Shown here: positions 4,743-54,540 of the stretch, one piece after another
How positions within the stretch are numbered: the stretch's first letter is position 1
Layout: each line of letters opens with the position of its first letter
Assembly: GCA_038087875.1 (NCBI GenBank)
Contig: CM075980.1
Span: forward strand, 63,488,001-63,552,000
DNA from: Malacoraja senta
Taxonomy: Eukaryota
Direction of reading: 5' to 3'
DNA length: 64,000 nucleotides
Made by a program: the position numbers and the translations under genes
Notes under the pieces: generated by a model
Database searches by the model: none
Seen by the model: the letters and a program-made list of their open reading frames with translations, nothing else
Told to the model about the DNA's origin: nothing

Positions 4743-5322
4743 GAATTACCATTTTGCTTCCTTTAACACCTGCTCGTTAAACCTTAGTTCTTGCATCTTG
4801 CTGGTTGTTATTTTATTTTAAATATGAGATCGTTTATTTACTCTTGGGGAAAATCTAATTGGTATAATTTGATCCAAGCACCTTCTTTATGGATACCTGG
4901 ATTGTCTTCTTGTTCAGCATTAGTTGTTTTCAAAAGTCAATGAGGATTGCTTGCTGGTCTCTATTTTCTTTGTTTTGATTTCTGCTCTAAAGTTATTATT
5001 TATTGTTGATTTATTTTGAGCCAGTTAACATCTGAATTATGCTTCTTTCAGTATATATAGTAATGAAATTCCACCCTAATTAATGGACATCAAATGTGGC
5101 ACAAATCTATGTGCTCTAAATTACTCTTTTAATATGATGTAAACCAAAAGCAGTCAATATATTTAGCACTAGTAGCAAAGGTTAAAGATTACTGCCTTTA
5201 CACAGTATTGCATGAATATACAGCAGGCTGCTTTTCTAAAGATTTTTGAGTAGATATTAATATATATCTTGGTATTTCAGCATGTAGAGATTGCAAAATG
5301 ATATGCCAGAGTTTGCTAACTG

Positions 5323-5376
5323 GTTGCTAAGGTCTTTCCAGGCAGTCCATAGCAACAGAGTTGCTACACTGGTGAC
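5323..5376. promoter_or_regulatory. Cluster of three RFX/X-box-like motifs
   Basis: gttgctaagg (5323), ccatagcaac (5347) and gttgctacactggtgac (5360) lie within 55 bp of non-repetitive DNA; X-box consensus is GTTGCCATGGCAAC. Confidence 0.4.
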
Positions 5377-8300
5377 ATCATGCTGTAGGCAGGCAGTGTT
5401 AAGACTGAAAACATGTGATGCCTGACACTGCCTCTATCTCGTTTTCTCGTGCAGATTTCTGCAGCCTGGGAGGGAGGTAAGGGGTCACATCCACGCACAA
5501 GCTCTGACATTGAACGTTTTTTTTTTACAGTATGCACATTAGCATTTATATTTGTCTTTAGCTGTGGTAATGCAACAATTTGACATTTGAGTTTTGCGTT
5601 GGTATTTGAAGGAATGCTCATGAGCAGGGGGCTTAGTCTGAATGAAGAAAGGGAACTGTCACTTAGATTATTTTGTACAGTGACATCATATAATATTTTT
5701 ATAGATTCTGCAGTTTGGAATTGAGTGAGTATGCAGTTGTATTGATTGCATCCTGTGGAGCAGGCACATCCTCCACAGACTTCTTCATGTAGCTCCTTCA
5801 GTACAGGCCGCTGTTGTCTGAAGTTGAAATGATACGCCTTATATCTGGTTAATTTTTACTGTACTTTTACCTTCCTTGCATAACAAAAACATTATTTGGT
5901 GATAGAAGACACTAACCGCATTTCTCCTTTCAGTCTGAGGCCTACTAAAGAAGTGATAATGTTAAATTATTTGAAATTTTCTGTACAGATTGTCCATCAG
6001 GTTGTTAATGGACAACTTGATGCATCTGAAATTAAGACATAACTAGCAATTATACATAGGTTGATTTGCTGACAAATATTTATTTTGTCTGGCTTTGTAT
6101 TCTAAGAATGTTGTTGAAAACCCCCCCCAAAATTTAATCAGCCAATATTAAATATATTTAACAAATTCTGACAAGCAGTCATGGGGCCAATATGATCCAG
6201 TATACAAACTGCAAAGCTAAAATATCAGTCAGAGGAGATTATAATCAATCCATAATCTGAAGCCTCATACTGAATACTGTTGATTATTAAAAAAAAAAAA
6301 TTGACCACAATGTAGAAGAGCTACATGTGTGATTCCCCAGAATCTGGAGTCTGAGTTAGAAGTAAAACTGGTGCCTTGAAATGAACCAGCAACTGTAAAG
6401 ACATTGGAGTCAGTTAATGGCAGGCCAATGAACATTTTGTTCGAGAGTCCACTGCTGGGAATTCAACCACTTCAGAGCAGTCAAAGGCAATCCGGCAGAT
6501 CTGGACCGGGTGGGTGGGTGCTTACAGGAGGGAAAGTCGGACATTGGAGTGATTGCGGTTGGTACTGATTAGGAGGTAAGGGAGCTGGGTGGGGTAAGGG
6601 TTAGTTGTGGAGGATCAGTGACAGGGATTGGTGAGATCAATAGTCTGGAGGGGAGAAATCAGTGGTGTTAGGAGGAATTAATAATCGGGGGATGTTTTGC
6701 TATTTGGGGTTGGTGTGATTCTAAATATGCACAAGGAACTGGATGGAATGATTTATTTGGGCCCTTGTGTTGGCTCCGATGGCCAGTGAAATAGTGGCTG
6801 TTGTGATGATCACTTTGTTGCCTGATCTACATAACTCTTCATTCCTCTGTAGTAAAAAAATGTCATACATCTCACACTTAGTGACATAATGCTTCAATTT
6901 TCATGACTCCTTGAAGCAGAGAATTCAGAAGATTTACACAGTCTATCATCCTGAGATCATATCCACTAATTTGAGACTGGAGCTTGCCTACCTGAGCCAT
7001 ATTCAACAGTGTCAGTGTTGGGTCTGTATTAGGTATGGTGGAAATAATTTATGACCTCAGGCTTGGGCCTGCCTTTTATGAGAAAATGGCCTAAGATTGT
7101 TAATGGGGTTACTTGCCAACAGGTAGGTTGGAAAGTGGCAATACAGGAAGTAGTTGTATAATTCTATGACTTCATCGAACATCATGTGTAATGGAAACAG
7201 GCTATCTGAGCTAACCCCATTTGCCTGGGTATTTAAGTATCAGCCTGTGTTGGCTGACTCCTTCAATTTTTTACAGCAGATGGTGAGAGAGCAGATTTCA
7301 TAGAACTTCAGACAGAAATTGAGATACAATTCAAGAAATAAAAAAATGGTCAATACCTGATGTAAACAGATAAAAATTGGCTTGCTTTTTAACAGGATTT
7401 TTAAAGAATGAATTTCCATCAGCATATCTCAAAGTTGATAAAATTATGACGATTCATGAATGATTTGGGAATAACTTTACAACTCCATATACTACCGGGC
7501 TGTTGACAATGGAGAATAACTGTCAGAGCTGATTATTCCTGCGAGAACTCAACTGTTCTTTATGAATGCTGGTCAGGCAGATCCTGTGGAGAAAGAAACA
7601 GAGTTCAGGTTTTGAGCATGTATAGTTTTTTGATTTTCAATTATTATTTTAATTACTAGTCTGTGTCTGGTCCAGAGTTTTATGTCAACTGACAGTGGGT
7701 TCCAGGAGAAGAGCAATGGGACCTGGCTATATATGTAGAAACCAGGAACTGCAGGTGCTGGTTTTCCAAAAATATATACAAAATGCTGGAGTAACTCAGC
7801 AGGTCAGGCAGCATCGCTAGTAAACATGAATAGGTGATGATTCACTTAATTTTATACTTGAGCTTACCTCTTTTACACTGAGACCTCTACAAGAAGAAAT
7901 ACTCCCAACACAAGACCAAATAACCTCTCTATATCTATCCTGGAAACTTCCTTTAGAATCTTCTATGCTTCAATAAGAACATATCTCAATCTGTTTAACT
8001 CATTAGACAATAGTCTCATTCTGCTTAATCTCTCCTCATAGGACAGCCATCGCATTCCAGGATCATCGTTGTTCAGAGTTCTAAAAGCAAACAACTTCAA
8101 ATGTTGGGATTCTGAAATCAAACCATAAAATGCTGAAGATACTTACTGCACTTCCCCAGATTCCTCCATGCATTAGTGTTTCGGATACATGGAGGGCCTG
8201 GAATGAAAAGTAGAGACTGAGCCATCAATGTGGCGAGTACTGATTTTTCATCATATTATGTTTTCATATAAATTAAACGTGAATGGTGCTATACAATCTA

Positions 8301-14569: not shown

Positions 14570-15500
14570 AGCAAAATGTTTAAAGGAGATATGTGAGGCT
14601 AGTATTTTACCCAAAAAGCGGTAGATGCATGGAATATACTGCCAGAGATGTAGTAGAAGCAGATATGATAGTAACATTTAAGAGGCACGTAGTTGGATAC
14701 CTGAACAAGCAGGGAACAGTAGGATGCAGACCATATGCAGGGAGATGGGATTAGTTACTCTGCCATCTTGATCATGACACACATGGTGGGCCAAAAGGGC
14801 CTTTCCTGTGCTTTACTGTTCTATGTTTTATTAAGTTTGTTGTTTTGTCCTTTGTTGTTTTACCCTTTGTTTTTGTCCAGTGCAAGTGGGAAATTGTATT
14901 TACAGCTTTGCTACCCTGATTACACTTTTATTGCTTTTGCTCCATGCTTGCAATTGTGGCTCCATGATTTGCCTCTTCAAATCTTCCTGTACTGCTTATT
15001 TGTTTCAATTTGTTCTTTGAATTGATCCTGCTGCTTCCTCACCTCATAACTGCAAGCACAAGCCTCTTTATATTTCTATTTGCTCTCGAGCTTTCTACTC
15101 AATGGAAACAAATTAAAAAAAAACATCTTTGTGGGCATTCATATCTTACATTTCAGAGATCTACTGGAAAACATTAGTTAAAATTATCTTGTTATTTATC
15201 TTTGTACAAATGCATATTCTGACTAAAAAATAGCAACATTTTGAGTAAGAAGGATATTCTAATAGGACCATTCTACATTATATTGTTATTCAGAGACTCG
15301 CTCAAATGTGCAACAGTCTTTTCAATTGATAATTTGTCAACTTAAATTTCCTTTGTAGGCTTTGGGCCTGGCTATTCGCAGGTGTAAGAGGAATCCTTGT
15401 CTCTGATGGCAACCTTCTGATCCGTCTTCTTTCTGTGAAAATTGCCGAGAAAGACTACTTTGCCACTTTAGTTGTCCTATTTAGGAGCAGATTAAGAGCA

Positions 15501-17474
15501 ATGGAAGGTGATGGTGACTTTGTACATTGTGGATCTGCATTTGTAAAAATTGAAAGACCTCAACTTGTGGAAAAGAGCAACACAACATCAGAAGTGTGGA
15601 GATACTTTGGTTTCCAACCCGGTAGTGACGGCAGACCAGAAAACATTGAAACTCCAGTTTGCAAAATCTGTTTCCGTGTCATTCCAGCAAAGGCCTCAAA
15701 CACAAGCAACCTTTATGCACATCTGAAATCCCAGCACCCTCATATTTACATAGAGGTCAAAAGCAAATCTAACCAGGCACCAACAACCTCAACTTCATCT
15801 GGAGAACCAAGCAAGGAACACACCACAATGATGCGGGAAATCTTTCAGCGAAAAGATAAATTTGATCCAAAACCCAGAGAGCACAGGGAGCTGACTAAGG
15901 CTGTGACGTACTACATAGCCAAGGATAGGATGCCTCTGAATATTGTTTCTAAGCCTGGTTTTCAGCACCTCTTGAACAAGTTTAACCCTAAATATGATTT
16001 GCCAAGCAAGAACTACTTCTCCAGAGTCGCTATTCCATCACTTTACGCGGATGTTCGCAAAGTTGTGGAGAGAGAATTAAAGAGTGCAGATTGTTTTGCG
16101 GCAACTGTTGAAACATGGACATGCAGAAGCAATGAAATGTATGTAACATGTGGAGTTCAGTTTGTGGATAGTGACTGGATGCTCAAAACACATTGCCTGC
16201 AGACCCAGTACTTACCAGATGAACACACTGGTCAGAGTCTGAAGTGTGCCCTTGAAGATGTGCTGGAGGAATGGGGGTTGGACACTACCAACCTTGTTGC
16301 TGTCACCACAGATAATGGACCTGCTGTCAAACATGCCTGTGAGTTGTTAAGCTGGAAAAGACATAACTGCTTCAGTCAGAATCTTCAATGTTCTATCCAA
16401 AAGGGTCTTGATGATTCACGCATTGAACGAATTATTCAACTGTCTCGTCAGATATTCTCTCAGTTTTCACGCAGTTGGAAAAGGAAGAAGGAATTTTCTA
16501 TAGCTCAAGGTCAGAAAGGGCTTCCGAGAAATTCACTAAAAGTGGATGTTAACAACAAGTGGGAAACAACTTTGGAAATGCTCGAAAGGATTCTTGAGCA
16601 GCAGGATGCTATCAGAGCTGTATTGGCCCATGACCGAAAGATATGCCGTCTTGTACCAACATGGCAGGACATTGATGTCCTTGAGTCCGTTATAAGTGTT
16701 TTATGCCCATTCCGTGAAATGACTGAGGCTTTGTCTTCTGAGAAATTCATTGCTATTTCAGCAATAAATCCTCTAATAAAACATATATGTAATGATCTCA
16801 TAAGAGAGGAACAAGAGGAACTAACTCTTGGCTTTCTAATGCGAATGAGAATCAAACGGGACCTTGAAATACGATATGGAGACCCAGAACTGACTCATTT
16901 TCTGGAAAAAGTTACATTCATTGACCCCCGATTTGGCCCCACTTGTGTAGATGATCTAGAAAATGTCCTGCAGCAAATTAAAGGGGAATTACTTGCTGGA
17001 AAGGTGGCTGAAGAACCTTCATTATTTCAAATTAGCTTTGATGGTTCAACGCTTTCTCCATCAAACCATTGCAGTTGGTATGATCGAGATAGCCCAGGGC
17101 CAAGTCAGCCAAAGAAAGCCAGATATGGAGGAGGACTTGCAAAGGTATTTGGAAAGCAGAGTGGAGATGGAGGCACGGACAAAATGGTAACGACTTGTGT
17201 TTCACTGCAGGAGCAGCTTGACCGAGAGCTGGATTTTTATTTCAAGGAACCAAAACTCTCCTTGGAAAACTGTCCTCTTCAGTGGTGGAAAGCAACCCAA
17301 AATTGCCTGCCCTTGTTGGCAAAACTAGCCAAAAAGTACCTCTGCATCTCTGCAATAAGTGTAGCATCTGAAAGAGCCTTTAACAACAGCAGTTCTGCAT
17401 TTGATGAATATCGAAGCAGCGTGAAGCCAAAACATATGGACCAGCTGGTGTTCTTAGCTGAAAATCTTCCATGA
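15501..17474 (+). CDS. ZBED1-like BED zinc-finger hAT-transposase-derived protein (657 aa from first in-frame ATG); probably domesticated
   Basis: Uninterrupted ORF with a BED finger (SEVWRYFGF...CKIC...SNTSNLYAHLKSQHP), hAT core (VTTDNG) and hATC dimerisation domain (PLQWWK...LAKLAKKYLCISAISVASERAF). A splice acceptor ttaaatttcctttgtag ends at 15358 and AATAAA occurs near 18007. No TIRs seen. Confidence 0.9.
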   Translation: MEGDGDFVHCGSAFVKIERPQLVEKSNTTSEVWRYFGFQPGSDGRPENIETPVCKICFRVIPAKASNTSNLYAHLKSQHPHIYIEVKSKSNQAPTTSTSSGEPSKEHTTMMREIFQRKDKFDPKPREHRELTKAVTYYIAKDRMPLNIVSKPGFQHLLNKFNPKYDLPSKNYFSRVAIPSLYADVRKVVERELKSADCFAATVETWTCRSNEMYVTCGVQFVDSDWMLKTHCLQTQYLPDEHTGQSLKCALEDVLEEWGLDTTNLVAVTTDNGPAVKHACELLSWKRHNCFSQNLQCSIQKGLDDSRIERIIQLSRQIFSQFSRSWKRKKEFSIAQGQKGLPRNSLKVDVNNKWETTLEMLERILEQQDAIRAVLAHDRKICRLVPTWQDIDVLESVISVLCPFREMTEALSSEKFIAISAINPLIKHICNDLIREEQEELTLGFLMRMRIKRDLEIRYGDPELTHFLEKVTFIDPRFGPTCVDDLENVLQQIKGELLAGKVAEEPSLFQISFDGSTLSPSNHCSWYDRDSPGPSQPKKARYGGGLAKVFGKQSGDGGTDKMVTTCVSLQEQLDRELDFYFKEPKLSLENCPLQWWKATQNCLPLLAKLAKKYLCISAISVASERAFNNSSSAFDEYRSSVKPKHMDQLVFLAENLP

Positions 17475-19667
17475 GCTTAACGACTTTGAAAAAATATGTT
17501 TAAAAAAACAGTGCAGGTTTGTGCTTACTGATTTGGTTAATCAAATGTGAAAAATATCATTGTGAAATGAAATATCTATCTGGGACAGGATGAATCCGAT
17601 TTTAAAAGATCGTTGGATGGCGAACTTGAGGGTCAACAATTAGTTATTAGGAATGGATCTATTTTTTTCCCTCTAATTTACAGACGGTTGTTTTCCATTG
17701 CATAAGTTCTCCTTAAGGCAACAAATTGCAATGATTTTATTGCTTCGGTAGCAGATGTTCCTTTTCCCTCATGTTGTTCTTCGTCTCCTGGTAATCAGAT
17801 ATGAAGTCCTGTCCTACATTATGCTTCTTCAAGAATGATAGTGCAGGGTGGATCAAAGACACACAGCTGCGGAGACCATCATTTGTCAGCAGAAAACACA
17901 TCTATGCTGCAAACTCACATATTGCTGGGTTGGTGTGACATACTGATTCTTTTTTGCTGTTAGGCTCCCTCTAAGCCAAAGCACCAACATTTTTATTCAG
18001 TTGATCAATAAATACATCATATTCTTTGAAAATATTAAAGAAAAAACAAGTTGGCTTTTTAATAGTAAGATTAAATGAGAACTTACCAGTTTGAAGTTTG
18101 ATCTTTATTTCATGAGGAGTTACGATGAGGGATTACGTGAAGAGCCCGCCAGCCCGAATGCGCATCAATCTTCAAAGCAGCGGTGTGAAATCACAGATAA
18201 CAGTTGATGAACTGAGTATAGTAAGATTCGAGAAAGTAGAACTACCAGCTGATTCTTATGAAAGAGGGTTGGGAGCGGAGGGCACATAATCCCTCATCGT
18301 AACTCCTCATAAAATAAAGATCAAACTTCAAACTAGTAAGTTCTCGTTTAATCTTACTATTTTACTTCGGAGTCACGTGAGTGACTATGTGAAGATTTCA
18401 AAGCTCTGAGATTTCATGCCGTGGACACGAGTCCATGCGTCACTCACTGCATCAATTGACCAAGGATGAGTGAACTTAATCATGCATTCAGACATGACAT
18501 AGATATAGACATGCTGATGCTTTTTTATGAACAAATAATAACAATAGTAACCCCTGTCATCCGGGAGGAAACTATAGACAGAACTTAAAATAGAGTTGGC
18601 AAATACCCCCGGTCTGGCAATGGGTTTGTATAAATGTATGCAAAGATCGTTCGTTTGACCACCCTGCAGACGCTAGGATGTGGTACAGCGGAACGTCCAT
18701 ATCCCTGCCGCTGAAACTGTTGCAGCCCTGGTGGAGTGAGATTAAAATGTCAGAGTCACTCCTGCACAAGCCAGAACCCGTTTAACCACAGTCTGTACTG
18801 ATACCTTCTTATGAGGTTTATGTAACTAACAAACATTGCTAGATCAGTGCCCGTAAGGCTCTAAGTGACCTAACGTATAGTAGTAGATGACCCCATGGAC
18901 CACAAAGGTCCATGGGGTATGCCCAAATTCTAGTTAGAGACCTGATGCCCCTGGTCTGCTCTGCTTGACTAAGCCATGAACATAAATAGTTATTTGCCTG
19001 CACATGTAACCGTGCTGTCCAGTGTAACCTATGCAATGACTGGATCCGTTGTGCTGAACCAGTGCCATGAGCATAATCACTTGTAAGTGAGTTAGACCAA
19101 GGACAGGGATGACGCCGGAGCCCACTGGCAAAACGGCGTCAGCACAATGTTAACATCCCATATCTCTGCGTACCTGGGCCTGGGAGGTTTGAGTTCATGA
19201 ATCTGGATATCAGAGGGTGAGACCCAACAGAGTGAGTCCCGCTCCTTGCAGAAATATGATGAGAAGGCACCTTTGGCACAGTTAATGGTACTATAATTTT
19301 ATGTCAAAGACCCATTCGAAAATGAACTCCCAGTCGTCAGTATCCGTGCCGTATATATGTCAACGAATTGATTTATCATGCATTGGACGGTTGCCCGAGT
19401 CACGGGCTGAACCAGCAATACTAGTTAAAATTAACCATATAAGGTTCTACAGTGGCTTGCAAAAGTATTCATACCCCTTGAACTTTTCCACATTTCGTCA
19501 CGTCACAACCACAAACGTAAATGTATTTTATTGGGATTTTATGTGATAGACCAACACAAAGTGGTGCATAATTGTGAAGTGGAAGGAAAATGATACATGG
19601 TTTTCAAACTTTTTTACAAATAAAAAACTGAAAAGTGTCACGTGCAAAAGTATTCAGCCCCCCTGAG

Positions 19668-21540
19668 TCAATACTTTGTAGAACCACCTTTCGCTGCAAT
19701 TACAGCTGCAAGTCTTTTGGGGTATGTCTCTACCAGCTTTGCACATCTAGAGACTGAAATTTTTGCCCATTCTTCTTTGCAAAATAGCTCATGCTCAGTC
19801 AGATTGGATGGAGAGCGTCTGTGAACAGCAATTTTCAAGTCTTGCCAGAGATTCTCAATTGGATTTAGGTCTGGACTTTGACTGGGCCATTCTAACACAT
19901 GAATATGCTTTGATCTAAACCATTCCATTGTAGCTCTGGCTGTATGTTTAGGGTCGTTGTCATGCTGGAAGGTGAACCTCCGCCCCAGTCTCAAGTCTTT
20001 TGCAGACTCTACAATTTGTTTGTCTTTGTCTTTTGGACAAATTTGTCATTTGGACCCCTTGAGGTCCAAACGAAATGTCGTTTCTGCAGCTATACATCAC
20101 AAAACGAAGAAGACCCGAGACACAACACAATTTACACATACATCCATCACAGCGCTGTGATGGAAGGCAAAAAAACGTATCTCTCCACTGCACTCCCCCC
20201 CTCGATGTCAGAGTCAAAGTCAAAGCCCCCGGCGGGCGATGGTGATTATCCCACGGCCATTAAAGCCACGCCGGTTAATGCAAGGTCGCGCACCGGGTCT
20301 TGGTGTTAAGAGCCCCGGCGTGCGCTCGCAAAGTCCGGCGGCCATTCCAAGCCGCGCGGGGGGATAAAGCCCCCGCTCCAGGTGCTCTTCAACCCCGCAA
20401 CTTGGGCGGGAGAAGTCGCTGCTGCGGAAGCCCCGAAAAGCGGTCTCCCACCAGGGACCCGCGGGCTTCCGGTGTTGCCGTCCGCCAGACCCGCGGTTGT
20501 AGCCTCCGAATCTCCGGGGGTCGGGTCGCAGCAGCGCTCCACCACAGCTCCACCCGCTCCGGACTCGGCCAGCTCCATGACGGTGAGTAGTCGGCAGCTC
20601 CGCAACCGGAGCCCCAGGTCGTTCCTGCTGGAGGCCGCTCCACGTTGCCAAGCCCCAACGACAACGGAGACCCGACAAAGAAAAGGTCGGGTCTCCCGTG
20701 CAGGGGAAAGATTTCAAAGTTCCCCCCCCCCCACCCCCACCCCCCCACACACATACCCCGACAAAAAAAATAATAAAAATCTACATAAAAACGAGACAAA
20801 AATAATAAAAAGACAGACGGACTGCAGAGGCCGCTGCAAACGAGAGTCGCGCCGCCCACCGCTAACAGGTTTTCTTCCAAGATTGCCCTGTATTTGGCTC
20901 CATCCATCTTCCCATCAACTCTGACCAGCTTCCCTGTCCCTGCTGAAGAAAAGCATCCCCACAGCATGATGCTGCCACCACCATGTTTCACAGTGGGGAT
21001 GGTGTGTTCAGGGTGATGTGCAGTGTTAGGTTTCCGCCACACATAGCGTTTTGCATTTAGTCCAAAAACTTCATTTTTGGTCTCATCTGACCAGAGCACC
21101 TTCCTCCACATGTTTGCTGTGTCCCCCACATGGCTTGTGGCAAACTGCAAACGGGACTTCTTATGGCTTTTTTTCAACAATGGCTTTCTTCTTGCCACTC
21201 TTCCATAAAGGCCTGATTTGTGGAGTGCACGACTAATAGTTGTCCTGTGGACAGATTCTCCCACCTGAGCTGTGGATCTCTGCAGCTCCTCCAGAGTTAC
21301 CATGGGCCTCTTGGCTGCTTCTCTGATCAATGCTCTCCTTGCCCGGCCTGTCAGTTTAGGTGGACGGCCATGTCTTGGTAGGTTTGCAGTTGTTCCATAC
21401 TCTTTCCATTTTCGGATGATGGATTGAACAGTGCTCCGTGAGATGTTCAAAGCTTGGGATATTTGTTTATAATCTAACCCTGCTTTAAACTTCTCCACAA
21501 CTTTATCCCTGACCTGTCTGGTGTGTTACTTGGGCTTCAA
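19668..21540 (-). pseudogene. Tc1 transposase pseudogene
   Basis: Paired-like [24 protein letters not shown] and SPDLNPIE motifs, with 34 residues between D and E. The expected start reads TTG, codon 5 is TAA, and the ORF is split between EENLL and ESAKDL by the 20012-20862 insert. Confidence 0.93.
20012..20862 (-). mobile_element. ~850-bp GC/CpG-rich non-autonomous insert, probably a LINE-mobilised SINE-like element
   Basis: Cleanly interrupts the Tc1 ORF with a (C)TA duplication. On the minus strand it ends in a stem-loop (tttggacctcaaggggtccaaa) and a short-repeat tail (gacaaagacaaacaaa). No TIRs. Confidence 0.75.
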
Positions 21541-22086
21541 GATGCTGTTTGTTCACTGATGTTCTCTAACAAACCTCTGAGGCCTTCACAGAACAGCTGT
21601 ATTTATACTGAGATTAGATTACACACAAGTGGACTCTATTTACTAATTAGGTGACTTCTGAAGGCAATTGGTTGCACTGGATTTTATTTAGGGGTATCAG
21701 TAAAGGGGGCTGAATACTTTTGCACGCGACACTTTTCAGTTTTTTATTTGTAAAAAAATTTGAAAACCATGTATCATTTTCCTTCCACTTCACAATTATG
21801 CGCCACTTTGTGTTGGTCTATCACATAAAATCCCAATAAAATACATTTACGTTTGTGGTTGTAACATGACAAAATGTGGAAAAGTTCAAGGGGTATGAAT
21901 ACTTTTGCAAGCCACTGTATATCATTCCCAACATCAGCGGGAACCATGGCTGCATAGGACAGTCACTACAAAAAATGCCTGAAGTGGGATTACTGAATAT
22001 TTGCAAGACCCGACTGATGAGGCAAAATGGAGGAAGACAAACCTCTCCAGTGTAGCGAGAGTGCATCTATCGCCACTGCCATGCCA

Positions 22087-22088
<2 letters not shown>

Positions 22089-22138
<50 letters not shown>
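22089..22138. repeat. (TA)n microsatellite
   Basis: About 25 TA units inside the DIRS MT-like region. Confidence 0.98.
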
Positions 22139-22143
<5 letters not shown>

Positions 22144-25100
22144 TTTTCTACTGGTGATTGAGCCTGGATGCAACATCTCGATCTTAGTGTTCCATGAGTC
22201 ACCAAGTCATTAAATACTTAGTGATCCAACATCCATTCTGTTTTGACATTGATTTTACATGATGATACACCAGTGCCAAATGAGGTTAGGTAAACCATCC
22301 CTGGATACGTTGACTTGATTGCACCCATGTGATTAACATATGACACCACCAAAGTGTATCAACTTGGACTTGAACATGCTGATTATGCATATTCGCACAA
22401 CCCTTAACCCATAGAATGCACCTAGTGTCTAAAGGTAGTTGATACCATAGAACTGAAGAATAGGTAACTCATGCAAATCCCATCACCTCCGTAACTAGAG
22501 ATGGTATTAGTAATTTCGCATCTTCAAGCACTCGCATCAGTTTGTATACTTACGAAAAGTTAGTGGAGCAATGCTGAATACTGTTCGTCCACCATAGTGA
22601 CTTTCATGGAGGTAAATAACGAGACCCACTTACCAGAGTCTCTAACTCCAGGTCCCTTACCTTTGCTGGAGTTCCAGCGAAATTTCATTCGCAGACTCTG
22701 TCCATGTTGTCATTTCCATTAGATCGCTGATGCGGGTGGCCAACTTCTCTTGTAGTGGCTAGTCCGTCACCGACGGAGCAGCAATTTTAGAAGCAAAGCA
22801 CCGTTTTCCCTCATGTGATTGTCGTGCATTATGCGTTAAGCATGGGACCCCGGCACAGTCATATTCGGGTTCCTGTTTGGAGTCAATCCATACTAACCTT
22901 AGACACTCTTTTAGAGTGGGAGTAATTGCACCTGAACCAGGTGTCACCATCCGTCTCCTCAATTTGTCTGTGCATGCCTCTGTACCAAGCATGTTTTGCG
23001 ACTCCATCTCCCATGGTCTTATAATATATATGGCTCCATCTTCATCCTTTATTCATCCGAATGGGAGGACTTATGCCCTGAACCAGGGGCTGCCTCAGGC
23101 TTGTGTGCATGTATTTTAGCACCATCTCCATCACTGCACTCAACCGAGTGGGAGGAATGGCAACTCTGAACCAGGCGTTGCTTAAGGCACATGTGCATAC
23201 TCCTGAAGCACTCTCTCCACCATTCCGTCATTTGAGTGGGAGGAAATTTGCAACCCTGAAGCAGGAGCTGCTGCCTGACATGCCTTTAGATGGAACGTTC
23301 TTTGACTGCGACGAATCGCAATCTTGTCTGACATAGATGCCCAAGACTTGGCACTCACTCTGAGTTGGGGTTGTCAGGTTGCTTCCTTCAGCAGCTGCCA
23401 GGACTAGCTGTGCAAATCGATGCTCTGTTGGTATCCTCATTCCCCAAACAGGCTGCACGTGCTAGTGACTCCGAATCCTGCTCCTTTCCGATGCCAATGC
23501 AGTATACAGGGAAGGACTGGAGCGCCTCTGGCCCCCGTACGTCAGACATAGTGGGAGAAATGCTGGAACAAAAACCTGCCCCTTATTTGTCATGGGCAAA
23601 GATGTTTACATGAATGAAGACGCCCATCCTAGTTAAATCAGAGATTTGATTACTTTATTGATATGAATAATCGGCGTTTTGGGGAAGAATCTTCCACAGT
23701 CCCTTAATGAGCGGAATTACCATGACGCCACCATGTACAGCTCGCACAGGTGACTGATAGGTATAGATCAACAAGACTTTCCAAGCCAGTGATCTAGACC
23801 GCCATGGCAGGTCCGATTCTACTACACAATTGAAAATAAAATTCTTTCTTGGTTATGATAGTCACAACGTGACCTAGTGGCAACTAAATAAATGACCACA
23901 CTGTATAGCCATACTTTAAAAGAATACACTATAACTAGACCACACAACCCATGTTATGGAAACCCAGACTCATGTACCTGCATAGATACCAGTGGTCTTG
24001 AGGTAAGCCCAAAGGCCCCTGATGTAGGTCCCATTCCCGTCCTTGATTTGGAGGGTAGAACTGCCGAAGTGCGTGGATAGTATATTTCCCCTGAAGGCCA
24101 GCTTGGGCCTAGGCCTGAAGAACTCTGCCGACAGAATCAGTTCCCTGGCTGCTACCAGCTTTAGAAAAAACTACTGCCATAGGAGACGTAAGGGTGATGT
24201 AGCCGTTAGTAACGTGAGGGGAACTCTGGTCCACCCCCCCCGGGTATACTGGAATCTAATGTAGAATGTGCCCTGGACACACTTTCGGGGTTGGGGTCAG
24301 ACACACACTGACCCTTTGCACTCCTCTCCACTGAGGGGAGATTAGAAAGCAGCCCTGAAAACAGGCGCTGCCGTAGTCCCCCGAGGACCTGCGCTGATAT
24401 GGCCCTGATCCGTGGACCATATCAGGATGTGTAGAACGTCTGAGAATGTACCGTAATGACGGAGGGGAACCCTCCTGGCCGGCCTCGTCCAGCCCAGGCC
24501 TCTCTGACTCCGTATAATTGCCCTCCTTTTGGGCTGCCGAAGTCGGGGTCGCTGACCGTACTGTCAGCGAGTCGGGTAGTAAACCCGACAGCCACCGGCA
24601 TTACCCGCGGTCTAAGTACCCCGCGGCCCGAATTTAAAAATCCTCGGGAGTCGCTGACCGCACTGTCAGCGAGTCGGGATGTGGACCCGACGGCCACCGG
24701 CTACTAACTCTACGCCCAACCGTAGCCGGCATCACCCGCGGTCTAAAGTACCCCGCGACGAATTTAAAATTCCTCGGGAGTCGCTGACCGCACTGTCAGC
24801 GACTCGAGCAGCAACCCCAACGGCCACCCACTACCCGCATACCGCGGTCCGTAGCCGGCATCCCCGCGGTCCAATTGGTTTCCCCGCAGTCCGACCGGGT
24901 TACCGTATGCAATATCCCACAGGAAACTCTGCGAGAAGAGTTTCCTGGAACAAAGGACAACCTAAAAAGTAAGTTTAAAACTTACCTGTAGGCTTTTAAA
25001 CTTACTGGTGGAGGAGCAGCGCGCCTGCCCAGCCAGTCGCTGCGCCATGCGTTAGACGTAATGATGTGCATGCGGACTGGCGGGCTCTTCACGTAGTCAC

Positions 25101-25794
25101 TCACGTGATTCCGAAGTAAAATCTGCTTACTTTTCTCTCAGTATTTTGCATGCTTGCATATTTGCTGAACAATTACGAGGAAGCTCCATGTATATTTATA
25201 GTAATGAATCAGTGAACTACTTTTCAGTCAATTTATCAGACAATGTACACTGACAGCACTAATGTATCAAGAATGAAGAATAAATTGAAGGGAGAAATAA
25301 TTATTAATTCAGTACTCCTACTACCCAAAAACCCAAATACTAAAGCCCCTGCTGTAAGTAGAAAATGGCACTGCGGTATTTAAATTTGTGTCATATTTTA
25401 ATGCAGTTTATTTATATATTATGATAAAAGTTGTGTATAACATTTTTATCCTTAAATATTATTGCTATAATAATTTTTATGTCAACATTTAAAATTTATA
25501 ATGGAATTCTTTAGGTAAACATTTATGTAAGTACTTTATAATGGAAAAGTGTGTAAAATTTCACTCGCATGATTTGTTGATAAATCATTTAAATAAAACT
25601 AACATTGGCTACATTTTTAATGTTCCTGAAATTTCAAAAATCCACATGGCTTTAAATCAGTGTTAAAAACTTTTGTATTTCACTTCATTCATTGAATTGT
25701 GTATTTTGATATGTTAAAAAATGTCAAAGATCTAAGCACATGTAAAGTCTCTGGTTTGGATAATGAAATTGCACAAAATAGTGACTATTGATTC

Positions 25795-53128: not shown

Positions 53129-54540
53129 TACACAAAAATGCTGGAGAAACTCAGCGGGAGCAGCAGCATCTATGGAGCGAAGGAAATAGGCAACGTTTCG
53201 GGCCGAAACCCTTCTTCAGACTGATAGGGGGTGGGGAGAAGAAAGGAAAAAAGGCGGAGGAGGAGCCCGAGGGCTGGGGGATGGGAGGAGACAACCAGAG
53301 GGCTGATGAAGGGGAGGGGACAGCAAGGGCTAGCAGAGTTGGGAGAATTCAATGTTCATGCCCCCAGGGTGTAGACTGCCCAAGCGGAATATGAGGTGCA
53401 TTTCCTCCAATTTCCGGTGTTGCTCGCTGTGGCCATGAAGGAGACCCAGGACAGAGAGGTCAGATACGGAATGGGAGGGGGAGTTGAAGTGTTGAGCCAC
53501 CGGGAGGTCAGGTAGGTTATTGCGGACCGACCGGAGGTGTTCGGCGAAACGATCGCCAAGCCTCCGCTTGGTCTCACCGATGTAGATCAGCTGACATCTA
53601 GAGCAGCGGATGCAATAGATGAGGTTGGAGGAGATGCACGTGAACCTCTGTCGCACCTGGAACGACTGCTTGGGTCCTTGAATGGAATCGAGGGGGGAGG
53701 TGAAGGGACAAGTGTTGTATCTCTTGCGGTTGCAAGGGAAAGTACCCGGGGAAGGGATGGTACGGGAGGGAAGGGAAGAATTGACAAGGGAGTTACGGAG
53801 GGAGCGGTCTTTGCGGAAGGCAGACATGGGGGGAGATGGGAAGATGTGGCGAGTGGTGGGGTCACGTTGGAGGTGGCGAAACTGACGGAGGATCACTTGT
53901 TGTATGTGACGGCTGGTGGGATGAAAGGTGAGGACTAGGGGGACTCTGCCCTTGTTGTGAGTGGGGGGATGGGGAGAGAGAGCAGTGTTGCGGGGTATGG
54001 CAGAGACCCTGGTGCGAGCCTCATCTATGGTGGAGGGGAACCCCCGTTCCCTGAAGAATGAGGACATTTCGGATGCCCTGGTGTGGAACGCCTCATCCTG
54101 GGAGCAGATGCGGCGTAGACGGAGGAATTGAGAATGGGGGATGGAGTCCTTACAGGAAGCAGGGTGGGAAGAAGTGTAGTCCAGATAGCCATGGGAGTCA
54201 GTAGGTTTGTAGTGGATGTCGGTATGAAGTCTATCACCTGCGATGGAGATAGTGAGGTCAAGGAATGGTAGGGAAGTGTCGGAAATGGTCCAGGTGTATT
54301 TGAGTGCCGGATGGAAGTTGGTGGTGAAGCGAATGAAGTCAGTCAGTTGTGTGTGGGTGCAGGAGGTGGCACCAAAACAGTCATCGATGTAGTGGAGGTA
54401 GAGGTCGGGGATGGGGCCCTGGTACGTATTGAACAAGGATTGTTCTACGTACCCGACAAAGAGGCAGGCGTAGCTGGGGCCCATGCGTGTGCCCATAGCT
54501 ACGCCTTGTATTTGGAGGAAATGGGAGGAGTCAAATGAGA
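53129..54540 (-). mobile_element. Penelope-like element, 5'-truncated; RT C-terminus plus GIY-YIG endonuclease in one open frame (53330-54496)
   Basis: AMGTRMGPSYACLF...YIDD...LPFLD...YKPTD...NLIYCIRCSRCQLIYIGETKRRL..RF.EH. The terminal repeat carries ctgaagaagggtttcggcccgaaac. Confidence 0.97.

What the first reader, a model, noticed from the sequence alone, without database searches (positions are those of the whole stretch)
15341..18012. Candidate domesticated hAT transposase gene (ZBED-like) with a selectively altered catalytic core
Seen: this is the only full-length intact ORF among many decayed TEs. It has a splice acceptor (AG ending 15358), a downstream AATAAA, no visible TIRs and few CpGs, so it looks old yet unbroken. 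Seen against hAT consensus: the first catalytic Asp motif (T-T-D-x-W) reads TVETW (GAA at 16110), the CxxH motif reads CFSQ (CAG at 16377), and TRW reads NKW. The second Asp (TTDNG), the final Glu (SERAF), the BED finger and the hATC dimerisation domain are retained. It also has SUMO-consensus sites (VKIE, IKGE) and an NLS-like PKKARY. Established: vertebrate ZBED genes arose by repeated independent hAT domestications and act as DNA-binding regulators. Inference: this protein resembles fish hAT transposases more than mammalian ZBED1, so it may be a separate chondrichthyan exaptation that lost cleavage but kept DNA binding and oligomerisation.
Basis: partly seen in the sequence, partly recalled or inferred. 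Interest (0 to 1): 0.75.

Follow-up and report, generated by a model that had tools for sequence, protein, structure and literature searches.

The report
Shark-and-ray-specific tamed hAT transposase gene
This skate gene descends from a jumping-gene enzyme; cartilaginous fishes have kept it as a single, intact, constrained copy since before chimaeras split from sharks and rays, and it is a separate taming event from the vertebrate ZBED1 whose name databases give it.

Summary
Window 15501-17474 (+) encodes an intact 657-aa protein with a BED zinc finger, a Hermes-like RNase-H fold and a hAT dimerisation domain. The first catalytic Asp is Glu, the CxxH His is Gln and the RW Arg is Lys.

Full-length orthologues exist in another skate (98%), a devil ray (90%), a shark (88%) and a chimaera (81%). 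In the three annotated genomes the gene lies nested, same strand, in a gene for a 311-316 aa product. It is single-copy by read depth, has no TIRs, and dN/dS is about 0.2 between skates; dS is saturated against chimaera.

The 66-residue BED region is invariant in all five species. The three altered catalytic positions also differ between species (E/K, Q/R, K/Q/H).

It is not ZBED1. Identity is 29% to gar ZBED1, whereas gar and primate ZBED1 share 71%. Trees place it with intact hAT transposases, one of which has perfect TIRs and an 8-bp target duplication. An AU test rejects a clade with ZBED1 (p = 6e-6). ZBED4 and ZBED6 are more distant.

It is most likely a non-catalytic, oligomerising DNA-binding regulator: a new member of a known kind. 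The host gene, tissue expression, DNA targets and the presence of a true ZBED1 in cartilaginous fishes remain open.

The parts
15501..17474 (+). Intronless coding sequence of the domesticated hAT/BED gene: 657 aa plus stop.
   Evidence: ORF listing. Pfam zf-BED and Dimer_Tnp_hAT. 81-98% identical orthologues in four other cartilaginous fishes, all starting at MEGDGD. DNA conservation with chimaera runs from 15480 to 17475 only.
15359..15500 (+). 5' untranslated part of the coding exon. The splice acceptor AG lies at 15357-15358.
   Evidence: Contigs of runs X1 and X2 start matching at 15357, each with 27 unmatched letters upstream, and have no depth over 14836-15336. This stretch has the highest skate-skate divergence, 4.9%, and its peptide is not conserved with chimaera.
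15552..15749 (+). BED zinc-finger region, residues 18-83. Presumed sequence-specific DNA-binding module.
   Evidence: 66 consecutive residues are invariant in all five species, and skate and chimaera are 100% identical here. Pfam zf-BED. Matches the solved ZBED1 BED domain 2ct5 at E 3e-8. Model pLDDT is 83-93.
16110..16112 (+). Codon GAA for E204, at the position of the first catalytic Asp (Hermes D180).
   Evidence: Hermes alignment ATIDLWT / ATVETWT. E in the four elasmobranchs and K in chimaera; D in 47 of 51 other homologues.
16311..16313 (+). Codon for D271, the retained second catalytic Asp (TTDNG).
   Evidence: D is kept in all five species.
16368..16379 (+). CFSQ in place of the hAT CxxH motif (C290...Q293).
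   Evidence: Q in skates, ray and chimaera, R in shark; H in 42 of 51 other homologues.
16557..16562 (+). K353-W354 in place of the hAT R-W pair.
   Evidence: W is invariant. The Arg position is K, Q, H and H across the clade.
17109..17126 (+). PKKARY, an NLS-like basic patch inside a predicted disordered stretch (residues 502-565).
   Evidence: PKKA(R/K)Y is kept in all five species. pLDDT is below 50 over 502-565. Nuclear-import function is inferred, not tested.
17217..17471 (+). hAT C-terminal dimerisation domain, residues 573-657, including the retained catalytic Glu E624 (17370-17372).
   Evidence: Pfam Dimer_Tnp_hAT at E 7e-18. Aligns to Hermes 425-505. 82% skate-chimaera identity.
17475..18052 (+). 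Proximal 3' UTR, with AATAAA at 18007-18012.
   Evidence: Covered by the X1 and X2 contigs through about 18063. Collinear with the related-skate contig L002 up to 18052.
25120..25660 (+). Probable continuation of the ancestral 3' UTR, separated from the gene by a 7.07-kb insertion (18053-25119). The end coordinate is approximate.
   Evidence: L002 joins 18052 directly to 25120. The X1 and X2 contigs run 527-546 letters past about 18063. AATAAA lies at 25591-25596. That the RNA continues into this stretch is inferred.
5288..5476 (+). Candidate promoter and non-coding first exon, with a GT donor at 5477-5478.
   Evidence: This is the only non-CDS block conserved with chimaera (L001 8407-8580, E 1e-7). 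GTGACATCATGCTG and TCTGCAGCCTGGG(G)AGGGAG|GTAAGGGGTCA are near-identical between the two. The exon ends in AG, which fits the contig matches starting 2 nt early at 15357. It is not confirmed by RNA: X1-X3 hold 0 of 6 sampled words.

Best explanation
This is a host gene that arose by domestication of an Ac-like hAT transposase. The event happened in, or before, the common ancestor of living cartilaginous fishes, and it was independent of the events that gave ZBED1 and ZBED4/6.

The whole protein is encoded in one exon, which is spliced to upstream non-coding sequence. In other cartilaginous fishes the gene sits in an intron of a same-strand host gene.

The protein keeps three transposase parts: the BED zinc finger, the RNase-H-like core with its helical insertion as a scaffold, and the C-terminal hAT dimerisation domain. 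It has lost the first catalytic Asp, the CxxH His and the Arg of the RW pair.

The most likely mechanism is as follows (inferred). The protein enters the nucleus, forms dimers or higher oligomers through the hAT C-terminal domain, and recognises specific DNA sites with the invariant BED finger. It then acts as a transcription or chromatin regulator, as ZBED1/DREF, ZBED4, ZBED6 and the plant SLEEPER proteins do, without cutting DNA.

Shown here: architecture, fold, residue changes, orthology, constraint, single copy and separate origin. Inferred: DNA binding, oligomerisation, nuclear location and regulatory role.
For: Architecture and fold: Pfam BED and hATC. The AF2 model has pLDDT 81. Its best solved match is Hermes (TM by target 0.68-0.73, E 5e-17). 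Its best reviewed matches are ZBED1, ZBED4, SLEEPERs, ZBED6 and Ac.

Orthologues: 98, 90, 88 and 81% identity in skate, Mobula, Chiloscyllium and Callorhinchus. An exhaustive HMMER search of 1.84 billion representatives found nothing between the clade's own 50%-identity cluster, represented by the chimaera protein (81%), and 44%. The clade has 100% support and species-tree order.

Synteny: nested on the same strand in a gene for a 311-316 aa product in three genomes.

Single copy: depth is about 32 across 14836-18008 on one error-free 3.4-kb genomic contig, while flanking repeats reach 1e4-1e6. No TIRs.

Selection: dN/dS 0.17-0.22; dN 0.107 with saturated dS against chimaera. CDS divergence is 1.67% against 2.8-4.9% in the flanks; 22 of 33 changes are at third codon positions; no indels. 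The BED region is invariant over 66 residues.

Catalytic sites: E/K, Q/R and K/Q/H. All three altered sites vary within a clade in which 75% of columns are invariant.

Independent origin: the clade sits in a 96-98% supported clade with P0005, P0006, P0007 and P0009, which all carry D-D-C-H-R-W-E. The P0009 element has 16-bp perfect TIRs and an 8-bp TSD, TGTGTACG. The AU test against a clade with ZBED1 gives dlnL 83.5 and p 5.6e-6. Identities are 37-41% to these transposases, 29% to ZBED1 and 25-26% to ZBED4.

Expression: contigs of two runs from a related species cover 15357-18063 and start at the acceptor. The tool guesses these runs are probably DNA. A few sense-consistent poly(A) RNA-seq reads come from another relative.
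Against: No functional data of any kind.

Elasmobranchs keep an acidic residue (Glu) at the first Asp position, and also keep the second Asp and the Glu, so residual metal binding cannot be excluded from sequence.

The sister sequences come from metagenome or Logan contigs of unknown organisms.

The trees are quick searches with SH-aLRT support only, and the stem branches are long (0.7-1.2).

The host gene is unidentified. Its product length (311-316 aa) is close to that of DHRSX, the ZBED1 neighbour. The arguments against DHRSX are indirect: no Pfam hit on record in three species, and no DHRSX-like exon within reach.

The tool labels runs X1 and X2 'RNA? (probably DNA)'. The upstream exon is unconfirmed.

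I could not check whether cartilaginous fishes also have a true ZBED1.
Confidence: 0.8

Rival explanations
1. It is the cartilaginous-fish orthologue of ZBED1, as the automatic NCBI names suggest, and has simply diverged very far.
For: NCBI names the chimaera protein 'E3 SUMO-protein ligase ZBED1' and the others 'ZBED1-like'. Human ZBED1 is the best reviewed structural match. Like ZBED1 it has one BED finger, a similar length and a single coding exon. It is nested on the same strand in a gene whose product length (311-316 aa) is close to that of DHRSX, the ZBED1 host or neighbour (PMC3606216).
Against: Identity to gar, coelacanth and primate ZBED1 is 27-29%, whereas gar and primate ZBED1 share 71%. 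ZBED1 ranks only about 80th among library representatives. The two clades are separated by starred branches with TIR-bearing transposons between them. The AU test rejects the joint clade (p 5.6e-6). The catalytic lesions differ. The host product has no Pfam hit on record in three species, whereas the DHRSX part of ZBED1-DHRSX fused models does carry PF00106 on record. tblastn with three DHRSX parts finds nothing in the 64-kb window or in 22 kb of chimaera DNA.
Confidence: 0.06
2. It is a domesticated transposase that still uses its active site. Like RAG1 or the yeast hAT-derived Kat1, it would act as a host nuclease or recombinase rather than as a pure DNA-binding factor.
For: Elasmobranchs have Glu, Asp and Glu at the three catalytic positions, all acidic. 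The RNase-H core is confidently folded. Hayward et al. noted unexplained retention of the DDE triad in ZBED proteins (PMC3606216).
Against: Chimaera has Lys at the first position. The CxxH His is Q or R, and the Arg next to the invariant Trp is K, Q or H. These sites therefore drift inside an otherwise strongly conserved protein. The N-terminal half of the RNase-H core, which carries both Asp positions, is the least conserved folded region (73%), while the BED finger is 100% conserved.
Confidence: 0.08
3. It is a transposon copy, active or recently dead, that happens to be intact.
For: It is hAT-like throughout and lies in a TE-rich region.
Against: Single-copy depth. No TIRs or TSD. Positional orthologues in ray, shark and chimaera. 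Purifying selection. The catalytic Asp was lost in every species.
Confidence: 0.01

Closest known systems
ZBED1 (hDREF/TRAMP), the domesticated Ac-like hAT gene of bony vertebrates
   Same: It has one N-terminal BED finger, a hAT RNase-H-like core with a helical insertion, and a hATC domain, with similar length (657 against about 694 aa). The CDS lies in a single exon spliced to 5' non-coding sequence. The gene sits inside or beside a same-strand host gene. It is a catalytically compromised but strongly conserved protein. It is the best reviewed structural match.
   Different: Identity is only 26-29%. The clade is separate and the AU test rejects a joint clade. ZBED1 keeps the first Asp and the CxxH His and has Asn at the second Asp in most species, whereas this gene shows the opposite pattern. 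ZBED1 has a C-terminal acidic tail of about 40 aa that is absent here. No DHRSX linkage was found. The taxonomic range here is cartilaginous fishes only.
ZBED4 / ZBED6 / ZBEDX group
   Same: They are domesticated BED and hATC proteins that act as DNA-binding regulators. ZBED6 is likewise nested on the same strand in intron 1 of a host gene, ZC3H11A (PMC3606216).
   Different: Identity is 22-26%. ZBED4 falls far away in the tree. These proteins have 2-4 BED fingers and are 980-1170 aa long.
Autonomous Ac-like hAT transposons of aquatic animals (P0005, P0006, P0007, P0009; element in L003)
   Same: They are the closest sequences, at 37-41% identity with full-length collinear alignment, and they are sister in the trees at 96-98% support.
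   Different: They keep D-D-C-H-R-W-E. At least one is bounded by 16-bp perfect TIRs and an 8-bp TSD. The skate gene has no TIRs, is single-copy and syntenic, and is altered at three catalytic-site positions.
Hermes transposase (solved structures 2bw3, 4d1q, 6dww, 8edg)
   Same: Same fold over about 550 aligned columns (TM by target 0.68-0.73). The alignable motifs define the catalytic positions.
   Different: 18-19% identity. Hermes is an active enzyme with D180, D248, E572, H268, R318 and W319 intact.
Plant DAYSLEEPER / RICESLEEPER
   Same: They are independent domestications of BED-hAT transposases that keep the DNA-binding and dimerisation modules and have lost catalysis. They rank high among the structural matches.
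   Different: They are plant genes of unrelated origin, with 17-19% identity.

Membership tests
hAT transposase superfamily (by descent) | BED or other N-terminal DNA-binding finger, an RNase-H-like core interrupted by an all-helical insertion domain, and a C-terminal hAT dimerisation domain | tested here: met
   Pfam zf-BED and Dimer_Tnp_hAT. Orthologues carry PF27041 and PF27039. The AF2 model matches Hermes at TM 0.7.
hAT transposase superfamily (as an active element) | Intact D-D-E triad together with the CxxH and RW motifs | tested here: not met
   The pattern is E/K-D-E, with CxxQ/R and K/Q/H-W.
hAT transposase superfamily (as an active element) | Short terminal inverted repeats and an 8-bp target-site duplication; multiple copies | tested here: not met
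   No credible flanking inverted repeat. Single-copy depth. For contrast, the sister element in L003 has both TIRs and a TSD.
Domesticated (exapted) transposase gene | Single-copy orthologues at a conserved genomic position across deeply diverged species | tested here: met
   Found in skates, ray, shark and chimaera. Nested in a same-strand gene for a 311-316 aa product in the three annotated genomes. The nesting could not be verified in the window itself.
Domesticated (exapted) transposase gene | Purifying selection on the coding sequence | tested here: met
   dN/dS 0.17-0.22. dN 0.107 with saturated dS against chimaera. Third-position excess, no indels, and a CDS less diverged than the flanks. 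Only three DNA sequences were available.
Domesticated (exapted) transposase gene | Transcribed as a host mRNA | tested here: inconclusive
   Contigs of two runs start exactly at the acceptor and span the CDS and 3' UTR, and there are a few poly(A) RNA reads. All of this comes from related species, and the tool is unsure that X1 and X2 are RNA. The upstream exon is not confirmed.
ZBED1 orthology group | Groups with bony-vertebrate ZBED1 in a tree, with identity in line with ZBED1's slow rate | tested here: not met
   29% against 71%. Separate clades. AU p 5.6e-6.
ZBED1 orthology group | Linkage to DHRSX (PMC3606216) | tested here: inconclusive
   No DHRSX exon in the 64-kb window or in 22 kb of chimaera DNA. 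The host product has no Pfam hit on record. The host gene was not identified.
ZBED1 orthology group | SUMO E3 ligase activity and DRE-type DNA binding | not testable with these tools
   These are biochemical properties. The psi-K-x-E motifs are conserved but they are substrate-type motifs and do not show ligase activity.
ZBED4/ZBED6/ZBEDX group | Multiple BED fingers and membership of the ZBED4/6 clade | tested here: not met
   One BED finger. ZBED4 is distant in the tree. Identity is 22-26%. ZBED6 was compared by structure search only.

The most novel reading that the evidence does not exclude
Cartilaginous fishes may lack a true ZBED1. In that case this independently domesticated hAT gene would fill the same role, a non-orthologous replacement reached by convergent domestication. 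Both would have one BED finger, a single coding exon, same-strand nesting in a host gene whose promoter or first exon the gene borrows, and loss of catalysis by a different route. ZBED1's regulation of proliferation genes would then have been invented twice in jawed vertebrates from different transposons.
Probability: 0.15. Interest if true: 0.65.

Novelty: new member of a known kind. Interest (0 to 1): 0.45.

Why it matters
Domesticated hAT/BED genes (ZBED1, ZBED4, ZBED6, SLEEPER) are textbook cases of transposases turned into regulators. The vertebrate set was defined without any cartilaginous fish (PMC3606216).

This gene adds an old member restricted to that lineage. It predates the split between chimaeras and elasmobranchs, which from general knowledge is about 400 million years ago or more. 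Its BED finger has not changed in that time, which implies a fixed DNA target.

The finding also corrects a database label: these 'ZBED1' and 'ZBED1-like' proteins are not ZBED1. Any inference of SUMO-ligase or DREF function carried over by that name is therefore unfounded.

The different pattern of active-site decay gives a natural comparison for asking which transposase parts domestication preserves.

Tried and rejected
- **Host gene = DHRSX?** Motif scans for SDR signatures in the window and in L001, and tblastn with the DHRSX parts of fused gene models P0253, P0265 and P0202, found nothing. The host gene stays unidentified.
- **Other conserved exons.** Six-frame fragments of the window against chimaera L001 gave only the CDS and one 200-nt upstream block.
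- **The window's own protein in the assembly index.** Not on record.
- **RNA support for the candidate first exon.** The runs with transcript-like contigs hold 0 of 6 sampled words. The test is blind if the exon is short or has diverged.
- **P0057 as a possible ZBED4.** It is not, but the search returned true ZBED4 sequences, which I used in the tree.
- **Is there a true ZBED1 in cartilaginous fishes?** The ZBED1 search list was cut at 120 of 230 hits and showed none. The atlas search gave only phylum-level taxa. Unresolved.
- **Earlier notes of the scan.** Nothing on this gene.
- **Literature.** Four full-text searches found no description of this gene.
- **I2** (21 nt, 76% complementary, 15045/17515) was considered as a TIR. 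I rejected it because it is weak, its right arm lies inside the conserved 3' UTR, and there is no TSD.
- **N-terminal extension.** An extension from an in-frame upstream ATG (5418 in the candidate exon) is rejected as conserved coding sequence. That stretch is the most diverged between the skates and is unrelated in chimaera.

Full report
**What is there**

The + strand frame is open from 15333 to the stop at 17472-17474. The conserved start is the ATG at 15501, in a good Kozak context (gcaATGg). It gives a 657-aa protein, and all annotated orthologues start at the same MEGDGD.

Pfam finds a BED zinc finger and the hAT C-terminal dimerisation domain. An AlphaFold2 model built on a 56-sequence alignment is confident (mean pLDDT 81, pTM 0.70). 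It has three disordered stretches: residues 1-17, 92-119 and 502-565. Its best solved match is the Hermes transposase (TM by target 0.68-0.73, E 5e-17). Its best reviewed matches are human ZBED1 (26% identity), ZBED4 (22-23%), the rice and Arabidopsis SLEEPER proteins, ZBED6 (22%) and maize Ac.

This is the longest ORF in the window by a wide margin. The neighbouring ORFs are TE remnants, including a Tc1-like HTH ORF at 20392-21498 (-) and a weak, sub-threshold GIY-YIG match (E 4e-4, 21.0 bits against a 22.6-bit cut-off) in the ORF at 53333-54496 (-).

**Catalytic core**

The HMMER alignment to Hermes and the 56-sequence alignment fix the key positions:

| Position (Hermes) | This protein | Window codon |
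|---|---|---|
| first Asp (D180) | E204 | GAA 16110 |
| second Asp (D248) | D271, kept | 16311 |
| CxxH | C290...Q293 | CAG 16377 |
| R318-W319 | K353-W354 | 16557 |
| Glu (E572) | E624, kept | 17370 |

**Orthologues and constraint**

A word-indexed search found four close clusters:
- a second skate, 98%, from Logan genomic contigs;
- Mobula hypostoma, 90%;
- Chiloscyllium punctatum, 88%;
- Callorhinchus milii, 81%.

The next hit drops to 41%. An exhaustive HMMER scan of 1.84 billion representatives confirms the gap: after the clade's own cluster, the best hits are 31-44% identical.

DNA was available for the related skate (L002) and the chimaera (L001).
- Against the skate, dN/dS is 0.17-0.22.
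- In that comparison the CDS differs at 1.67% of sites, against 2.8-4.9% in the intron, 5' UTR and 3' UTR. 22 of 33 CDS differences are at third codon positions. The CDS has no indels, while the flanks have eight gap columns.
- Against the chimaera, dN is 0.107 and dS is saturated. Nucleotide similarity (74%) starts 20 nt before the ATG and stops exactly at the stop codon.

Conservation is uneven along the protein. Residues 18-83, which hold the BED finger, are invariant in all five species. The N-terminal half of the RNase-H core, which carries both Asp positions, is the least conserved folded part, at 73% between skate and chimaera.

The three altered catalytic positions also differ among the five species: E/E/E/E/K, Q/Q/Q/R/Q and K/K/Q/H/H. 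About 75% of columns in this clade are invariant. If the sites behaved like average columns, all three varying would have a chance of about 0.25 cubed, or 0.016. This fits a protein selected for DNA binding and architecture rather than for catalysis.

**Not a mobile element**

A genomic run of the same organism (X6, all sampled words held) covers 14657-18086 with one error-free contig at word depth 32. The unique intron beside it has the same depth, while the flanking repeats reach 1e4 to 1e6. No credible terminal inverted repeats flank the ORF.

In chimaera, shark and ray the gene lies inside a same-strand gene whose product is 316, 311 and 311 aa. That gene overruns the 22-kb loci on both sides. 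This conserved micro-synteny spans the deepest split within living cartilaginous fishes.

**Gene structure and expression**

Contigs of two runs from a related species (X1, 3285 nt, depth 17; X2, 2101 and 1186 nt) cover the gene. Both start their match at 15357, each with 27 unmatched letters upstream. Neither has depth over the unique stretch 14836-15336.

The simplest reading is a spliced mRNA that uses the acceptor tttcctttgtAG|G at 15358. The 2-nt overhang would arise if the upstream exon ends in AG. The tool itself labels these runs 'RNA? (probably DNA)', so I treat this as good but not conclusive evidence. A poly(A) RNA-seq run from another relative gave a handful of reads in the CDS with the orientation expected for a + strand RNA.

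One non-coding block, 5288-5487, is conserved with chimaera. It contains a perfectly conserved GTGACATCATGCTG. It ends in TCTGCAGCCTGGG(G)AGGGAG|GTAAGGGGTCA, a conserved splice donor after an exon that ends in AG. I propose it as the promoter and first non-coding exon. The RNA test was blind: X1-X3 hold 0 of 6 sampled words.

The AATAAA at 18007-18012 is real, but the related species' contigs read 527-546 nt past it. The related skate's genomic contig joins 18052 directly to 25120. So this species carries a 7.07-kb insertion about 580 nt into the ancestral 3' UTR.

**Is it ZBED1?**

The NCBI pipeline names the chimaera protein ZBED1 and the others ZBED1-like. Five lines of evidence speak against orthology.

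- **Identity.** True ZBED1 is very conserved. A tenrec query finds gar, bichir, sturgeon, coelacanth, frog, bird and mammal proteins at 58-72%, and gar and primate ZBED1 share 71%. The skate protein is 27-29% identical to these. The ZBED1 representative ranks only about 80th in the exhaustive search.
- **Trees.** IQ-TREE trees (LG+C20, PMSF) with 53 and 40 sequences give a 100% ZBED1 clade and a 100% cartilaginous-fish clade. They are separated by starred branches. The cartilaginous-fish clade sits in a 96-98% group with P0005, P0006, P0007 and P0009.
- **Sister group.** Those four proteins keep the full D-D-C-H-R-W-E set. The P0009 element is bounded by 16-bp perfect TIRs (TAGTGTTGAGCGGTAT) and an 8-bp duplication, TGTGTACG, the hallmark of a hAT insertion.
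- **AU test.** Forcing the cartilaginous-fish clade together with ZBED1 costs 83.5 log-likelihood units (AU p 5.6e-6).
- **Active-site lesions.** ZBED1 keeps the first Asp and the His and has Asn at the second Asp in most species sampled. This gene does the reverse.

ZBED4 is far away in the tree and only 25-26% identical. ZBED6 is 22% identical by structure-guided alignment.

One loose end points the other way. ZBED1 lies in or beside DHRSX (PMC3606216; several gene models fuse the two), and the unidentified host product here has a similar length. Against that, the host product has no Pfam hit on record in any of three species, whereas an SDR would be expected to carry one, as the ZBED1-DHRSX fused models on record do (PF00106). 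In addition, tblastn with three DHRSX sequences finds no exon in the 64-kb window or in the 22-kb chimaera locus. I put ZBED1 orthology at about 6%.

**Mechanism**

What is shown: a transposase-derived, single-copy, syntenic, constrained gene. Its DNA-binding finger is frozen, its dimerisation domain is kept, and its active site has decayed.

What is inferred: the protein is nuclear, since the conserved PKKA(R/K)Y sits in a disordered loop. It oligomerises through the hATC domain as Hermes does. It binds a fixed DNA motif through the BED finger and regulates transcription or chromatin, as ZBED1, ZBED4, ZBED6 and the SLEEPERs do.

The two psi-K-x-E motifs are conserved. About one is expected by chance in a protein of this size, and they say nothing about ligase activity.

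A residual catalytic role cannot be excluded for elasmobranchs, which have E-D-E. The Lys in chimaera and the drift at the His and Arg positions argue against it.

**Novelty**

Repeated domestication of hAT transposases is well established, so the kind is known. This particular gene appears undescribed. Four full-text searches found nothing, and the reference ZBED phylogeny contains no cartilaginous fish. It is currently mislabelled.

I rate it a new member of a known kind, of moderate interest. The more novel possibility is that cartilaginous fishes lack ZBED1 and that this gene is its convergent replacement. That could not be tested here.

**Limits**
- Only three DNA sequences were available for dN/dS.
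- The trees are quick searches with SH-aLRT support only.
- The sister sequences come from contigs of unknown organisms.
- The host gene is unnamed.
- The expression evidence comes from related species.
- No functional data exist.

Noticed in passing
window 18053-25119: This is a 7.07-kb insertion that the related skate lacks: its contig L002 joins 18052 directly to 25120. It begins with a 79-nt inverted repeat (18061-18139 / 18283-18361) and holds a Tc1/mariner-like HTH ORF at 20392-21498 (-). It interrupts the gene's ancestral 3' UTR about 580 nt after the stop codon.
   Followed up: partly
window 5288-5476 (chimaera L001 8407-8580): This upstream block is conserved between skate and chimaera. 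It has X-box-like GTTGC(T/C)A motifs, an invariant GTGACATCATGCTG (a CRE-like TGACATCA) and a conserved GT donor. In the skate an ATG at 5418 would be in frame with the main ORF if this exon is spliced to 15359. A 1-nt indel before the donor changes the phase in chimaera, so it is probably non-coding.
   Followed up: partly
proteins P0023, P0175, P0176 (lampreys) and P0032, P0308, P0309 (bichir, reedfish): These proteins are also labelled 'ZBED1' or 'ZBED1-like', but they form their own clade (91-98% support). Their catalytic sites are degenerate: D-E-C-Q-K-W-E in lamprey and D-G-C-D-R-W-A in bichir. The lamprey protein is more than 90% conserved across three or four lamprey genera. They may be further undescribed domesticated hAT genes, and the bichir also has a true ZBED1 (P0286).
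   Followed up: partly
L003 5854-8200 (ENA metagenome contig ERZ25069580:ctg100909): This is a compact 2.35-kb hAT element encoding P0009. It has 16-bp perfect TIRs (TAGTGTTGAGCGGTAT) and an 8-bp TSD (TGTGTACG), inserted in a (TG)n tract beside a kinesin gene of an unidentified eukaryote. The called protein lacks about 29 residues of the hATC domain.
   Followed up: partly
proteins P0080 and P0313-P0325 (Podarcis, Lacerta, Zootoca): These gene models are named 'nucleolar protein 9'. They are about 1000 aa long and carry a hAT transposase part with intact TTDCW and CxxH motifs, and they are conserved across three lacertid lizard genera. They could be a host-transposase fusion or a recurrent gene-model artefact.
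   Followed up: no
proteins P0202, P0249, P0253, P0265, P0255, P0286: Several public gene models fuse ZBED1 with DHRSX (they carry adh_short Pfam hits) or name a ZBED1 protein DHRSX. This reflects the nested arrangement of the two genes in bony vertebrates.
   Followed up: no
window 53333-54496 (-): A 388-aa ORF with a weak GIY-YIG nuclease match (E 4e-4). It may be a Penelope-like element remnant.
   Followed up: no
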